Shown: positions 6,064 to 54,965 of the stretch, one piece after another
Layout: the number at the start of each line of letters is the position of its first letter
Position numbering within the stretch: position 1 is the first letter of the stretch
Sequence record: MH595538.1
DNA: 64,000 bases
Reading direction: 5' to 3' (one strand)
The notes under the pieces: generated by a model
What the model saw: only the letters and a program-made list of their open reading frames with translations
Told to the model about the DNA's origin: nothing
Database searches by the model: none
Position numbers and translations under genes: made by a program

Positions 6064-6510
6064 ATGAAAAAACTACAAGCCCTAGGTGCTTATATTAAAG
6101 AAAAAACTGGCATTACTAAAGGCCATTTCTTCACTGCAATGATTTCACTCGTTATTGGTTTTTCAATCAGTCATTTTACTCAGCCGTCAATTGAAGAGAG
6201 TCCTCAGTATCTTGAACTTCAAGCCAAGGTTACTGAGAGCCTAGAACGTACTGAGGCAGTATTAAAACAATCTCAAGAAAAAGATTCTATCATTGCCAGT
6301 CAAAAACAATTCATTGAAAAACAAGCAAGGGCGCTCGATGAATATAAAGACATTTCAGTTAAATTACAAAATGAGATTGGCGATTATGAAATTGAAGTAG
6401 CGTCTCTGAAAAGAAAGGCGGATCAGTTAGAACTAGAAAGAAAGTATCTGATTGAACAGAATCAACATTTAAAAACTAAGTTGACTAGAAACAGCTATGT
6501 ATGGGACTAA
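6064..6510 (+). CDS. Putative i-spanin (Rz-like)
   Basis: Single N-terminal TM segment (FFTAMISLVIGFSISHF) followed by a long coiled coil; directly followed by a lipoprotein gene. Confidence 0.65.
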   Translation: MKKLQALGAYIKEKTGITKGHFFTAMISLVIGFSISHFTQPSIEESPQYLELQAKVTESLERTEAVLKQSQEKDSIIASQKQFIEKQARALDEYKDISVKLQNEIGDYEIEVASLKRKADQLELERKYLIEQNQHLKTKLTRNSYVWD

Positions 6511-51968: not shown

Positions 51969-52571
51969 ATGACATTGCCCATGAGAGACGAAGAGTATAA
52001 AGAATACATCGTCGTAAATGCTGTTGATCAGCAACCTAAGGCCGAGAAGCATCTGCCGGAGGCATCTATAGATAAAAAGATATTAGAACGCATAGAGAAG
52101 CTCCCAGAGGCTCTATTGGAAGCACTGGATGATTGGATACTAGTTCCCGATGCTAAGCTCATACCCAAGCTAATGGAACTCTCAAAAGCTATTGCTCCCT
52201 TATACGGGAAACAGTCTCTGAAGTTACTGAGAGGTTTCGGCGGCGCTCCAGAATATCAGGATACAATGGGTTTAGAATTTGAATCTGGGTTTTGGCGCAG
52301 AGGACTCAAAGCTAAGATAGGCGATGAGTTTAAATACGCTAATGAAAGACCATTGTCCATGACGACCGATTTAGATATCGCTGCTGCTTTTGGAGATAAC
52401 GTAGTTAGAACCACGCAAGAAATTAAGATGTTCGATAACAACCTGCCTATCACTAGCGAACTATCTTACATTGTCTCTAAGCGAAGAAACCTTGGTGAAA
52501 CTAAAACGCAGAAAGAAGTGGTCTTATTCCCGGGCGAATATACTTTCTATATCGTACAAAAGAAAAGATAA
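51969..52571 (+). CDS. Putative ADP-ribosyltransferase (R-S-E clade)
   Basis: KLLRG (Arg), PLSMTTDLDIAAAFG (S-x-T/S motif followed by A..F), TQKEVVL (QxE). Confidence 0.6.
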   Translation: MTLPMRDEEYKEYIVVNAVDQQPKAEKHLPEASIDKKILERIEKLPEALLEALDDWILVPDAKLIPKLMELSKAIAPLYGKQSLKLLRGFGGAPEYQDTMGLEFESGFWRRGLKAKIGDEFKYANERPLSMTTDLDIAAAFGDNVVRTTQEIKMFDNNLPITSELSYIVSKRRNLGETKTQKEVVLFPGEYTFYIVQKKR

Positions 52572-52605: not shown

Positions 52606-54225
52606 TTATTTATTTAAGAAGTCATATAAGGCTGAGAAACCTGCGGCGTCGAAGCCAACAAAGTCCATTGAGTCAGGATCCTTAGGATCTGCAATAGACG
52701 CCCTCGTTGCCGTAAAGCCGATAACTGCCTGCTTTACACGAGTGTTTTTAGCACGGCGATAATCACTCAGTAACTTCTGGGTGTGATAACGACCATTGGT
52801 CTCATTGTCCGTTAAGAAGATGATCTCTTCATAAGTTTCTTGCTTACAGACTTCTTCATGCAGAAGAATCTGCAGGGCATTATCTAGATGAGTAGGGCCT
52901 CCAGAGTGACTTTCTACGCCCTTACAGAAGTCGGTCAGGGTCAACTTAGGATCCAACTCATTCAGTCTAAAGCACTGATCGTTAATTAAGAAAATAGTCG
53001 CGTTCGGTTCCGAGCGATACATGATGTAAGCTAAAGCAGCGGCCGCTGTAAAAGCACTAATAGAGCTATCATTAAGTTTATCATGCATTGAACCAGAAAC
53101 ATCGATGAAGATTGCCTTGCGTTTACCGTTACCTTTGAAAGCCTCAAAAGACTTAATTAGGTTAACGCCTAGCGCATCGACAATTTCTTTTCTAACGCCC
53201 CAGGTATTACTGTCTCGGAAACCATGCCCTGCTTCATACTGGCAACGAGCAAGAAATGCCTGCCATGGATGTACACGCAATCCTTCTTTCAGACGATCTA
53301 CTGCTTGGTCGCGCAAATAAGGTTCATCGAATACACCTCGAGATTCTAACGTAGCTAGGTTTCTAATAAAAGCAGTATCTGGCATGCGTTCTTCGAAAAG
53401 AGCTTTCCAGATATAGTTTTTGGATAAGAACTCCTTAGGTAGGAACTCACGAGGGAAGTCATAATGACGAATACCTTCTAGCGCTAGCTGCTGTCCATCA
53501 GCTTGATCAGGATCCATGCTGTATAACAAGTCCTTCATTTTATAGCGCTCTGGGATCAAGGTATCATTATGTTTTGAGCCAGTGACATATCCCATCCAAG
53601 CTTCCATCTCTGGAGAATCCGGCTTGATATGAATATTGCGCAATACATCACGATGGGACCATCCAAAACGAGACTTATACTTTTCACATTGGAAAAGTAC
53701 CTGATCTGGAGTCTTAGAAGTATACCACCATGCAAATGCTTTCTTAACTGCCTTGCCCCATCCACGGAACATAACGACGTAAGATACAAACTCTAAGAGC
53801 AGCGATCCTGTCTTAGCGACTTCTCTAACGCCATATTTGAGAGCTATCTTACGCACTTCTTCTTCCGGATGATTAGTATAATATGCAAGCAAGAATAAAG
53901 TTGGAGAGTTAGAAGGTGCACGTCTGCGCGAAACGACATCCTTAATGACCGTCATCACTTCTTCGAAATCTTCTACCGTTTGTACCTTGGAATTAATAAA
54001 ATCCAGAGCATTTAAAGTTAGCTCTTGTGACGTAGCATAATAGGTTGGTGATGACGTACCTAGAATTAAGAAGCGCTCTAGGAATGTTTTAAGACGTACA
54101 TCGAACACCATGCGTCCTTCGTTGTTTTTGGACATCTCATCCTCACGACCTGGGATCGCTTCTTTTGCATTTACTGACGTAGGTGATGCTGACTGATCTA
54201 CTTTAAAGTTTCCGTAACCGGACAT
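52606..54225 (-). CDS. rsr: Ro60/Rsr TROVE-vWA RNA-binding protein
   Basis: FLERFLILGT...TYY, RGWGKAVKKA..WY, KYKSRFGWSHRDVLR..H, AFIRNL and VHP motifs; vWA MIDAS DVSGSM; IFLTDNET. Confidence 0.93.
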   Translation of the reverse strand: MSGYGNFKVDQSASPTSVNAKEAIPGREDEMSKNNEGRMVFDVRLKTFLERFLILGTSSPTYYATSQELTLNALDFINSKVQTVEDFEEVMTVIKDVVSRRRAPSNSPTLFLLAYYTNHPEEEVRKIALKYGVREVAKTGSLLLEFVSYVVMFRGWGKAVKKAFAWWYTSKTPDQVLFQCEKYKSRFGWSHRDVLRNIHIKPDSPEMEAWMGYVTGSKHNDTLIPERYKMKDLLYSMDPDQADGQQLALEGIRHYDFPREFLPKEFLSKNYIWKALFEERMPDTAFIRNLATLESRGVFDEPYLRDQAVDRLKEGLRVHPWQAFLARCQYEAGHGFRDSNTWGVRKEIVDALGVNLIKSFEAFKGNGKRKAIFIDVSGSMHDKLNDSSISAFTAAAALAYIMYRSEPNATIFLINDQCFRLNELDPKLTLTDFCKGVESHSGGPTHLDNALQILLHEEVCKQETYEEIIFLTDNETNGRYHTQKLLSDYRRAKNTRVKQAVIGFTATRASIADPKDPDSMDFVGFDAAGFSALYDFLNK

Positions 54226-54255
54226 AATGTTTTCCTCTAGTGGGCAGGATATACG

Positions 54256-54290
54256 ACTATTACTCTCAGCCCGAAGGCTGAGAGCATAGT
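54256..54290 (-). promoter_or_regulatory. Stable UUCG hairpin in the Ro60 leader
   Basis: ACUAU-GCUCUCAGCC-UUCG-GGCUGAGAGU-AAUAGU, about 30 nt upstream of the Ro60 start; no U-tract follows. Confidence 0.55.
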
Positions 54291-54326
54291 TACTTGCGTT
54301 TACACCCTAAGGTGCTTAATTGGTGC

Positions 54327-54474
54327 TGATCTTTCTGAAAAGAACAAGTATTTAGCAAAGATACGTTGCTCTACCAACTGAGCTACCCTCCTTGCGGAGA
54401 GACGGGACTTGAACCCGCGACCAACGACTTAGCAGGTATAACCTTCACTATTCGGCTCTTATTCAAAAAGATCA
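54327..54474 (-). ncRNA. Y RNA (YrlA-like) no. 1 with circularly permuted tRNA domain
   Basis: Long terminal stem with GCCGA. Then T arm GCGGG-UUCAAGU-CCCGU, acceptor-like hairpin CUCUCC-GCAA-GGAGGG, and D arm UAGCUCAGUUGGUAGAGC, in the order T, acceptor, D. Confidence 0.85.
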
Positions 54475-54502
54475 ATCAGGGCTGACTATTACTAGTCAAA
54501 AA

Positions 54503-54674
54503 TGTATCTTGTTCTTAACCCAGACAAAAAGGTGTCCAAGGATGGTGTATGGCCTTGTACTCTAACCAACTGAGCTACGGCGATCATAAAGATTCACCGG
54601 CAGGACTCGAACCTGCGACCCCAAGGGTTATGCAATAACCTTAAACAATCGGCCCGGACTAAGAACGAGATACA
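54503..54674 (-). ncRNA. Y RNA (YrlA-like) no. 2 with circularly permuted tRNA domain
   Basis: Long terminal stem (UGUAUCUCGUUCUUAG/UUAAGAACAAGAUACA) with GCCGA. T arm GCAGG-UUCGAGU-CCUGC, hairpin CGGUGA...UCGCCG, D arm UAGCUCAGUUGGUUAGAGU, CCUUG/CAAGG stem. Confidence 0.85.
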
Positions 54675-54682
54675 CTTGGTGT

Positions 54683-54761
54683 ACCAATACGCTAGAACAA
54701 GTTGTGTGCTAACGGGCATTTGACATATGTAACGTTAACACTTCGGCTCTAGCATATTGGT
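54683..54761 (-). ncRNA. Short Y RNA-like hairpin no. 3 (YrlB-like, no tRNA domain)
   Basis: ACCAAUAUGCUAGAGC/GUUCUAGCGUAUUGGU stem, the same AGAGCCGAA motif as RNA 1, and a GUGUUAACG/CGUUAGCAC upper stem. Confidence 0.7.
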
Positions 54762-54947
54762 GAACTCTGTTTTTTATTTGATGTGATTATCACAAGGGGC
54801 TAGTACTTCATCGACTAGCCCCTTGATCATCCACGTCGCGCAAAGCAGTTCATCGGGAGAATGATGATGATTGAAGCGCCCAAACAACAACCGTACTTTA
54901 CAGCATATTATTAGGCGGAACTGGTATTTTTTCTTAATAACTTCAGA

Positions 54948-54965
54948 TCTATATAACCATGATGA
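54948..54965 (+). promoter_or_regulatory. Putative phage early promoter motif, copy 4
   Basis: TCTATATAACCATGATGA. Confidence 0.7.

What the first reader, a model, noticed from the sequence alone, without database searches (positions are those of the whole stretch)
52606..54830. Phage-encoded Ro60 RNP locus with three different Y RNAs in tandem
Seen: a complete TROVE-vWA Ro60 gene (minus strand) whose upstream 600 bp has no real ORF but holds three consecutive stem RNAs. All three share a GCCGA motif at a helix junction and an AA(G/C)GUUA motif about 10 nt downstream. Established: bacterial Ro60 (Rsr) binds Y RNAs encoded next to it; YrlA types carry a tRNA-mimic domain; Rsr/Y RNA can be tethered to PNPase; loci often sit beside RtcB; and Ro/YrlA has been reported in a few phages. 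Inference: a nucleus-forming jumbo phage builds several distinct Ro RNPs from one transcript. Possible roles are RNA quality control, steering host PNPase, or tRNA-shaped decoys against tRNA-damaging defences. No RtcB is present in this window. I do not know of a three-RNA array described in a phiKZ-like phage.
Basis: partly seen in the sequence, partly recalled or inferred. Interest (0 to 1): 0.9.

Follow-up and report, generated by a model that had tools for sequence, protein, structure and literature searches.

The report
Phage Ro60 gene with three Y RNAs
Vibrio jumbo phage BONAISHI carries a Ro60 RNA-binding protein gene preceded by three unannotated small Y RNA genes (two of them tRNA mimics); the locus is real, but it is an ordinary example of a system already described in other phages and bacteria.

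Summary
The window is Vibrio phage BONAISHI (MH595538.1). ORF49c (52606-54225, minus) is a full-length Ro60/Rsr: TROVE plus vWA_Ro60 domains, E 3e-55 to D. radiodurans Rsr. The 764-nt gene-free stretch upstream holds three minus-strand Y RNAs. Unit A (54683-54761) is a short hairpin type. Units B (54511-54666) and C (54329-54472) are YrlA type, with T arm, closed acceptor-like hairpin and D arm. They are the published GNCGAA Ro-recognition motif and the conserved YUAY element. The basal bulged-C helix covaries across 20 viral YrlA-type RNAs and 87 short Y RNAs.

The claim of novelty does not hold. Phage Ro60/YrlA loci were reported in 22 phages in 2014. Thermus phage phiLo Ro60 with two upstream Y-like RNAs was characterised in 2025. 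In my survey of 80 IMG/VR Ro60 loci, 37 have at least 2 predicted Y RNAs and 19 have at least 3.

Three things are new. These RNAs are unannotated in BONAISHI. The host phage is a chimallivirus by genome content. The locus is syntenic across the BONAISHI/pir03 clade. Function (tethering Ro60 to host PNPase) is inferred, not shown.

The parts
52606..54225 (-). Ro60/Rsr orthologue (ORF49c, 539 aa): TROVE HEAT-repeat ring plus vWA domain with MIDAS motif DVSGS
   Evidence: Pfam TROVE and vWA_Ro60. PDB 2NVO E 3e-55 over residues 29-533. PHROG 850 'RNA-binding protein' 7e-41.
54683..54761 (-). Y RNA unit A, short hairpin type (YrlB-like). It has a 16-bp basal stem, then bulged C plus GA (GCCGAAG) opposite UUG, a 9-bp upper stem containing GUUAC, and no tRNA-like domain.
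   Evidence: MFE -33.3 kcal/mol, z -6.06. Model R1 of short viral Y RNAs gives 41.7 bits, E 4.7e-7 for the core 54691-54753, but unit A was itself one of the 28 sequences the model was built from. No Rfam family matches it.
54511..54666 (-). Y RNA unit B, YrlA type. The basal stem carries a bulged C (GGGC-C-GA / UU-GUCUGGG). The tRNA-like domain has T arm GCAGG-UUCGAGU-CCUGC, an 8-bp closed acceptor-like hairpin and D arm GCUC-AGUUGGUUA-GAGU. In the whole-region fold the stem extends to about 54500-54677.
   Evidence: Rfam YrlA 35.8 bits, E 5.5e-6 at 54529-54648. Folds. T/AS/D detector.
54329..54472 (-). Y RNA unit C, YrlA type. The basal stem carries a bulged C (AAGAGC-C-GA / UU-GUUCUU). It has T arm GCGGG-UUCAAGU-CCCGU, a 6-bp acceptor-like hairpin closed by a GCAA tetraloop, and D arm GCUC-AGUUGGUA-GAGC.
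   Evidence: Rfam YrlA 59.3 bits, E 8.9e-13 at 54335-54446. MFE -47.4, z -3.8. R1 28.3 bits, not in its training set.
54262..54285 (-). 10-bp GC hairpin with UUCG loop between the Y RNA array and the Ro60 ribosome-binding site. An equivalent hairpin precedes Ro60 in L002, L003 (there followed by U7) and the pir03-type phages.
   Evidence: z -4.0. Its role as attenuator, processing barrier or mRNA 5' stabiliser is inference.
54793..54825 (-). 12-bp hairpin GGGGCUAGU-CGAUGAAGU-ACUAGCCCC upstream of unit A. It resembles a basal Y helix with the interior missing. Whether it belongs to the system is uncertain.
   Evidence: z -5.7. R1 11.6 bits, E 0.017 in an 801-nt search.
54877..54917 (-). Further hairpin in the leader. 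It shares AGUUC..AAUAUGCU with the 5' flank of unit A and may be a decayed copy.
   Evidence: Whole-region fold. AATATGCT occurs only at these two places in the window.
54948..54958 (+). TCTATATAACC promoter-like motif, 31 nt before the ORF50 start codon. It is not part of the Y RNA system unless it works in both directions.
   Evidence: The same motif lies 31-33 nt before the ATG of ORF44, ORF50 and ORF60, and upstream of ORF19, ORF33 and ORF59.

Best explanation
This is a phage-encoded Ro60 ribonucleoprotein system. Shown from sequence: the phage has a full-length Ro60/Rsr ring protein and, directly upstream on the same strand, three Y RNA genes. Each RNA has the canonical Ro60-binding module: a long basal helix, a bulged C followed by G.U and A-U pairs, an internal loop and an upper stem. 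Two RNAs (B, C) carry in place of the terminal loop a circularly permuted tRNA-like domain (T arm, closed acceptor-like hairpin, D arm, possible G15:C48 pair) with no anticodon loop. One RNA (A) is a 63-nt-core short Y RNA. Inferred from established Ro60 biology (D. radiodurans, S. Typhimurium, Thermus phage phiLo): Ro60 binds the basal helix of each RNA on its outer surface. The distal module recruits a partner, most likely the host exoribonuclease PNPase, so that structured or misfolded RNA threaded through the Ro60 ring is degraded. Three different distal modules would then give up to three RNPs with different partners or regulation. Also inferred: the RNAs are probably made as one precursor with the Ro60 mRNA and trimmed by host tRNA- and rRNA-processing nucleases. 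The GC hairpin before the Ro60 ribosome-binding site may set the RNA-to-protein ratio.
For: Ro60 identity. Motif triplet, 3 found against 0.02 expected. Independent folding of A, B and C. Rfam YrlA E 9e-13 and 5.5e-6. The motifs equal the published GNCGAA(N0-1)G and YUAY elements: alignment. Basal-helix covariation in 20 viral YrlA-type RNAs: 7 of 8 pairs change on both sides, and over all three helices 90.3% of cells are paired against 72% shuffled and 35-47% slid. Short class: all 96 R1 hits lie on the Ro60 strand, with covariation score 0.80 against 0.25. Relatives with 42-43% identical Ro60 in syntenic phage contigs also have a YrlA upstream. Phage precedent for Ro60 plus upstream Y-like RNAs plus host PNPase: PMC12135203. 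Bacterial precedent: PMC4201824.
Against: There are no expression data for BONAISHI, so stable accumulation, ends and Ro60 binding of the RNAs are unproven. Both YrlA hits fall below Rfam's gathering score (69). Unit B deviates from the motif (GCCGAU), folds with a weak z-score (-1.8) and is not found by R1. No minus-strand promoter or internal terminator could be assigned. PNPase tethering is extrapolated from three other systems. The T and D stems in alignment A4, and the basal helix in the R1 training set, were partly imposed by my own search filters, and A6 is fitted to the model.
Confidence: 0.8

Rival explanations
1. The tRNA-like Y RNAs act mainly as decoys or sponges for host factors that recognise the tRNA elbow or acceptor. 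Candidates are tRNA-targeting defence nucleases, modification enzymes, RNase P and the CCA-adding enzyme. Ro60 would serve only to stabilise the RNAs.
For: Both B and C keep the tRNA elbow determinants: G18G19, UUCRA T loop, U8, A14, A21 and a possible G15:C48 pair (and sequence). Bacterial YrlAs are substrates of TruB, DusA, RNase P and CCA addition. BONAISHI has no tRNA genes of its own.
Against: There is no anticodon stem-loop, so anticodon nucleases of the PrrC/RloC kind have nothing to cut. Unit A has no tRNA-like part yet keeps the Ro-binding module. The arrangement is the same in hundreds of Ro60 loci of unrelated phages and bacteria. That argues for a Ro60-centred role rather than a host-specific decoy.
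Confidence: 0.1
2. The structured region is a cis-acting 5' leader of the Ro60 mRNA, for autoregulation or stability. It would not be a set of separately accumulating small RNAs.
For: It is on the same strand and directly upstream. No internal promoter or intrinsic terminator was detected apart from one weak hit. A conserved hairpin sits just before the ribosome-binding site.
Against: In other viral loci the same modules lie downstream of Ro60 (L031, L065, L076). In bacteria homologous RNAs accumulate as discrete Ro60-bound species cut from polycistronic precursors. Each module is a closed, independently folding unit.
Confidence: 0.07
3. B and C are decayed tRNA genes, or a chance junction of a T arm and a D arm, with no link to Ro60.
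For: Tandem tRNAs can mimic the T-arm/D-arm order. My detector and Rfam both flagged the real tRNA-tRNA junction in L003.
Against: ARAGORN finds no tRNA anywhere in the window. The segment between the T and D arms is a closed hairpin with a tight loop (GCAA in C). Both units are enclosed by long stems carrying the Ro-binding motif. The detector finds only these two sites in 128 kb of window sequence on both strands.
Confidence: 0.02

Closest known systems
Bacterial rsr/YrlA/YrlB loci (S. Typhimurium, M. smegmatis; Chen et al. 2014, PMC4201824; Rfam RF02553)
   Same: A Ro60 orthologue has Y RNAs next to it on the same strand. The GNCGAA motif lies near the 5' end. One type has a tRNA-like domain with T arm, acceptor-like hairpin and D arm. 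A second is a hairpin type without the full domain.
   Different: There is no RtcB/RtcA next to it and no sigma-54/RtcR control. There are two YrlA-type RNAs instead of one. The scores fall below the Rfam gathering cut-off. The genome is a lytic jumbo phage.
Thermus phage phiLo Ro60 with Yrl1 and Yrl2 (NAR 2025, PMC12135203)
   Same: A phage-encoded Ro60 has several Y-like RNAs directly upstream, found through the CGAA motif and the stem-bulge-stem shape. This is the closest working model: in vitro it forms a Ro60-Yrl-host PNPase complex.
   Different: phiLo Ro60 is too divergent to appear among the PDB sequence hits of the BONAISHI protein. phiLo has two RNAs. That paper describes stem-bulge-stem RNAs and does not use the term YrlA. 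It is not a nucleus-forming phage.
Ro60/YrlA loci of actinobacteriophages and other jumbo phages (22 phages in Chen 2014, including mycobacteriophages, CcrColossus and Bacillus phage G)
   Same: Same protein family at about 30-34% identity, with YrlA-type RNAs nearby.
   Different: The host is a marine gamma-proteobacterium and the phage is phiKZ-like. Iyer et al. 2021 (PMC7824862) listed TROVE proteins only for a subset of jumbo phage groups 2 and 3, not the nucleus-forming group.
Metazoan Y RNAs (hY1 etc.) bound by Ro60
   Same: The basal helix has a bulged C followed by G.U and A-U pairs opposite a 3' UUG. It is followed by an internal loop and an upper stem.
   Different: The distal module is a tRNA mimic or a short loop rather than the pyrimidine-rich loop. 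There is no La-binding 3' U tail and no polymerase III transcription.

Membership tests
Ro60 / Rsr (TROVE family) | TROVE HEAT-repeat domain followed by a Ro60-type vWA domain, full length | tested here: met
   Pfam PF05731 4e-14 and PF25045 3.8e-25. Aligns over residues 29-533 to 2NVO and 25-536 to 9NEN.
Ro60 / Rsr (TROVE family) | MIDAS motif DxSxS in the vWA domain | tested here: met
   DVSGS at residues 375-379, aligned to DVSGS of Rsr. D375, S377 and S379 are invariant in 33 homologues.
Ro60 / Rsr (TROVE family) | Binds Y RNA and misfolded RNA | not testable with these tools
   Needs protein-RNA binding assays.
YrlA (Rfam RF02553; Chen et al. 2014) | Encoded within 4 kb of the Ro60 gene on the same strand | tested here: met
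   Unit C ends 104 nt and unit B 286 nt upstream of the Ro60 start codon, both on the minus strand.
YrlA (Rfam RF02553; Chen et al. 2014) | GNCGAA(N0-1)G motif near the 5' end | tested here: inconclusive
   A has GCCGAAG (exact). C has GCCGAAUAG (two nt before the G). B has GCCGAUUG (U at the sixth position). The GNCGA core is present in all three.
YrlA (Rfam RF02553; Chen et al. 2014) | tRNA-like domain: T arm, closed acceptor-like stem-loop and D arm in that order, with tRNA elbow nucleotides | tested here: met
   Met for B and C. Not met for A, which is therefore not a YrlA.
YrlA (Rfam RF02553; Chen et al. 2014) | Score at or above the Rfam gathering threshold (69 bits) | tested here: not met
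   59.3 and 35.8 bits. The threshold also misses every YrlA-type RNA in 20 other viral Ro60 loci, so it is a narrow model rather than evidence against homology.
YrlA (Rfam RF02553; Chen et al. 2014) | tRNA-type modifications, RNase P cleavage, co-purification with Rsr | not testable with these tools
   Experimental.
Y RNA in general | Basal helix formed by the 5' and 3' ends, with a bulged C in the Ro60-binding site, supported by covariation | tested here: met
   Folds. Covariation of the basal helix in A4: 7 of 8 pairs change on both sides. The same holds in A6.
   Unit A scores 41.7 bits and aligns over all 66 model positions. It was one of the 28 training sequences, so the score is not fully independent. 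Homology to S. Typhimurium YrlB itself was not tested.
rsr-yrlBA-rtcBA RNA repair operon | RtcB ligase and RtcA cyclase adjacent | tested here: not met
   Neither is annotated in the window or listed in the genome paper's annotation table. Only annotation was checked; no RtcB profile search was run.

The most novel reading that the evidence does not exclude
The Ro60/Y RNA locus is an ancestral, syntenic feature of the marine BONAISHI/pir03 clade of nucleus-forming phages. Its RNPs would work in the host cytoplasm, outside the phage nucleus. There they would retarget host PNPase or other tRNA-binding enzymes against host RNA or RNA-based defence, with each of the three Y RNAs recruiting a different partner. 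As a by-product, the roughly 65-nt short Y RNA (unit A type), absent from Rfam, would be a widespread and so far uncatalogued partner class of viral Ro60.
Probability: 0.2. Interest if true: 0.6.

Novelty: new member of a known kind. Interest (0 to 1): 0.35.

Why it matters
It corrects the annotation of a phage proposed for biocontrol of a coral pathogen. The genome paper reports an 'RNA-binding protein' and no tRNA-like genes. In fact there is a complete Ro60 system with three non-coding RNAs. It places Ro60/Y RNA in a chimallivirus lineage, which a 2021 jumbo-phage survey did not list among TROVE carriers. BONAISHI is a cultivable phage-host pair in which the still unknown role of phage Ro60 during infection could be tested. 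The survey done here also shows that arrays of short and tRNA-like Y RNAs are the rule rather than the exception next to viral Ro60 genes. The Rfam YrlA model misses most of them, which is useful for anyone annotating phage genomes.

Tried and rejected
1. Rfam at gathering thresholds found nothing in the window and no YrlA in 20 viral Ro60 loci. E-value mode and my own models were needed.

2. I first read GGTTATATAGA at 54948-54958 as the minus-strand promoter of the Y RNA array. That reading is rejected. The motif read on the plus strand (TCTATATAACC) sits at a fixed 31-33 nt before ORF44, ORF50 and ORF60, and upstream of plus-strand genes that have no minus-strand neighbour. The sigma-70 scan found no promoter. 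The promoter of the array stays unassigned.

3. I tried to fetch the 44-49 kb contig of the closest relative (P0002), which has about 1 kb or more of non-coding sequence upstream of Ro60. No DNA was available. Both metagenome scans found nothing. A lookup with the wrong frame end failed.

4. Close relatives in IMG/VR: none with the single protein, and one truncated locus with the three-sequence alignment.

5. The pir03-type phages (pir03, C-ZP2022, sm033) carry a very divergent TROVE protein at the syntenic site. Rfam, my T/AS/D detector and R1 found no Y RNA in their 340-360 nt upstream regions. This is unresolved.

6. A first naive stem detector (8 bp plus CGA...TT) gave about 85 hits in the window and was discarded.

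7. An alternative pairing of unit C's 5' strand with GCUCU at about 54283 was dropped. The UUG-anchored stem is the one the folding supports.

8. ORF48, the conserved neighbour, looked by eye like an R-S-E ADP-ribosyltransferase. There is no Pfam or PDB support, so no claim is made.
Full report
IDENTITY OF THE WINDOW. The window is nucleotides 1-64000 of Vibrio phage BONAISHI, MH595538.1, a 289-kb lytic jumbo phage of Vibrio coralliilyticus (100% identity, same coordinates). GenBank annotates ORF49c (52606-54225, minus) as 'RNA binding protein'. It annotates nothing between that gene and ORF50 (54990, plus). The genome paper reports no tRNA and does not mention Ro60 or Y RNAs (PMC6207643). BONAISHI groups with the Chimalliviridae and encodes chimallin (ORF71) and PhuZ (ORF59) (PMC10587174). 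Nucleus formation itself has not been shown for this phage in anything I read.

THE PROTEIN. ORF49c (539 aa) matches Pfam vWA_Ro60 (3.8e-25) and TROVE (4e-14) and PHROG 850. It aligns over nearly its whole length with D. radiodurans Rsr (2NVO, 3e-55), Ro60 9NEN (6.7e-53) and X. laevis Ro60 (1YVP, 6.4e-48). The MIDAS motif DVSGS is kept. It is a bona fide Ro60 orthologue.

THE RNAs. Chance expectation is 0.02. Each copy opens an independently folding module:
- Unit A, 54683-54761, MFE -33.3 kcal/mol, z -6.1.
- Unit B, 54511-54666, z -1.8.
- Unit C, 54329-54472, z -3.8.
The same three modules appear when the whole 764-nt intergenic region is folded without constraints.

All three share one plan. 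A long helix is formed by the 5' and 3' ends. Then comes a C with no partner, followed by G.U and A-U pairs (5' GC-C-GA opposite 3' UUG). An asymmetric internal loop and an upper stem follow. This is the canonical Ro60-binding module of Y RNAs.

In B and C the upper stem leads into a T arm (GGUUCRAGUCC), a closed hairpin in the position of the acceptor stem, and a D arm (AGCUCAGUUGGUAGAGC). The closed hairpin is 6 bp plus a GCAA loop in C, and 6+2 bp plus a 5-nt loop in B. By inspection U8, A14, G18G19, A21, G53, U54U55C56, A58, C61 and a possible G15:C48 pair are all present. Rfam's YrlA model matches C at 59.3 bits (E 9e-13) and B at 35.8 bits (E 5.5e-6). ARAGORN finds no tRNA. A strict T-arm/hairpin/D-arm detector finds only these two sites in both strands of the window.

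Unit A lacks the tRNA-like domain and matches no Rfam family.

WHAT THE TWO MOTIFS ARE. Chen et al. [quoted passage not shown] They also describe a conserved YUAY at the start of the variable region (PMC4201824). An alignment of B, C and 18 other viral YrlA-type RNAs shows both as family-wide conserved blocks, G-N-C-G-A and GGUUAY.

COMPARATIVE SUPPORT. The closest Ro60 proteins, at 43% and 42% identity, come from metagenomic contigs. These contigs are syntenic with BONAISHI. Homologues of ORF43c, 45, 46 and 47 flank Ro60 in L003, and an ORF48 homologue flanks it in L002. The large P0002 contig also carries a phiKZ internal-protein domain.
- L003 has two tRNAs, a YrlA (Rfam 37.8 bits) and a weak short-Y candidate upstream of Ro60.
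- L002 begins inside a YrlA-type RNA.

IMG/VR holds 418 viral contigs with a Ro60 relative, and I fetched 80 of them. In the MAFFT alignment of 20 YrlA-type RNAs, RNAalifold recovers the 8-bp basal helix just 5' of the CGA. Seven of its eight pairs show changes on both sides. Over the three helices, 90.3% of cells are paired, against 72% after shuffling and 35-47% when the partner is slid. One caveat applies: the T and D stems were required by my detector, while the basal helix was not.

For the short type I built model R1 from unit A and 27 viral sequences. It finds 96 matches at E <= 0.01 in 562 kb. Every one lies on the Ro60 strand and none on the opposite strand. The hits include many sequences that were not used to build it, among them unit C. 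Both helices covary: score 0.80 against 0.25 shuffled and 0.11-0.17 slid. That alignment is fitted to the model, which favours the structure.

HOW UNUSUAL IS A THREE-RNA ARRAY? It is not unusual.
- All three bacteria studied have at least two Y RNAs.
- Chen et al. list 355 YrlAs in 254 bacteria and 22 phages.
- Thermus phage phiLo has Yrl1 and Yrl2 upstream of its Ro60, and these form complexes with host PNPase in vitro (PMC12135203).
- In my survey, 37 of 80 viral Ro60 loci have at least two predicted Y RNAs and 19 have at least three. These are typically mixtures of RNAs of about 65 nt and about 125-145 nt, with up to five in L039.
BONAISHI's set of one short and two long RNAs is a standard configuration.

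WHAT IS NEW.
- The RNAs are unannotated in this phage.
- tblastn of the BONAISHI Ro60 finds 355 phage records. Nearly all are actinobacteriophages. Only four Vibrio phages, two Agrobacterium phages and one Sinorhizobium phage are from Gram-negative hosts, and no Pseudomonas, Erwinia or Salmonella phiKZ-like phage appears.
- The four Vibrio phages (BONAISHI, pir03, C-ZP2022, sm033) carry their TROVE gene at the same syntenic place.
- The pir03-type protein is only about 20% identical to BONAISHI's. I found no recognisable Y RNA upstream of it.
- The pir03 paper mentions a Ro60-related protein and the YrlA concept but identifies no RNA.
- Iyer et al. 2021 listed TROVE proteins only for some group 2 and 3 jumbo phages.

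TRANSCRIPTION. I could not identify the promoter. The only recurrent motif in the intergenic region, TCTATATAACC at 54948-54958, is oriented for ORF50. It recurs at the same 31-33 nt distance before ORF44 and ORF60. At three divergent junctions it also faces a minus-strand gene, so a bidirectional role cannot be excluded. Between the motif and unit A lie two more hairpins, at 54877-54917 and 54793-54825. The second looks like an empty basal Y helix. A 10-bp UUCG hairpin at 54262-54285 separates the array from the Ro60 ribosome-binding site. An equivalent hairpin is present in all relatives and in L003 is followed by U7. 'One transcript' is therefore plausible but untested.

MECHANISM. Shown: the gene content and the RNA architecture. 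Inferred from the named precedents: Ro60 binds each basal helix, and the distal modules tether a partner, with host PNPase the best-supported candidate. Structured RNA would then be fed through the ring to the nuclease.

The decoy idea is not excluded for factors that read the tRNA elbow. No RtcB or RNA ligase is annotated in the window or listed in the genome paper. I checked annotation only.

VERDICT. This is a real and well-formed feature, and a new member of a known kind. Interest is moderate to low for the locus itself. The cultivable chimallivirus context and the uncatalogued short Y RNA class raise it somewhat.

Noticed in passing
L011-L090 (IMG/VR Ro60 loci); window 54691-54753(-): There is a conserved class of short Y RNAs of about 62-70 nt: 8-bp basal helix, bulged C plus GA, 9-bp upper stem, GGUUAYC, and 3' ACUUG. 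It lies in tandem arrays beside viral Ro60 genes. All 96 model hits are on the Ro60 strand. No Rfam family matched the BONAISHI member in the one E-value scan run on it.
   Followed up: yes
L004 6177-6535(-), L009 2143-2500, L010 2130-2464: pir03, C-ZP2022 and sm033 carry a very divergent TROVE protein (about 20% identity to BONAISHI's) at the syntenic site. Their 340-360 nt upstream regions give no YrlA or short-Y match. The pir03 GenBank record annotates three 30-36 aa ORFs there that are probably spurious.
   Followed up: partly
window 13785, 34353, 49077, 54948, 60177 (and about 59120): A promoter-like motif TCTATAT(A/C)ACCAT(A/G)(A/G)TG recurs in intergenic regions, 31-33 nt before the start codons of ORF44, ORF50 and ORF60. 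pir03 has TTCTATATTACC at the equivalent place. From my own recollection, unchecked here, it resembles phiKZ-type early promoters.
   Followed up: partly
window 54262-54285(-); L002 about 285-310; L003 about 500-530; L004 about 6205-6240(-): A strong GC-rich hairpin lies 25-45 nt before the Ro60 start codon in every member of the clade. In L003 it is followed by a U7 run, like an intrinsic terminator.
   Followed up: partly
window 54793-54825(-) and 54877-54917(-): There are two extra hairpins in the leader. The first contains GU-CGA and looks like a basal Y helix with no interior. The second shares AGUUC..AAUAUGCU with the 5' flank of unit A. They may be decayed Y RNA copies.
   Followed up: partly
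L003 1-141: In the 42%-identical relative, two genuine tRNA genes sit directly upstream of the YrlA and Ro60. This recalls the Yrn2-tRNA-Yrn1 precursor of D. radiodurans. BONAISHI itself has no tRNA gene in the window.
   Followed up: no
window 51969-52571(+) (ORF48): This 200-aa gene is convergent with Ro60 and is conserved next to Ro60 in L002 (45% identity). It is absent from L003 and the pir03-type loci. It has no Pfam or PDB match and only a weak PHROG hit of unknown function.
   Followed up: partly
window 54560-54621: The acceptor-like hairpin and D-arm part of unit B is 84.6% identical over 62 nt to an unannotated stretch of Enterococcus phage vB_OCPT_CCS1 (ON113170.1, 38158-38218). That stretch is probably a tRNA or tRNA-like element.
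   Followed up: no
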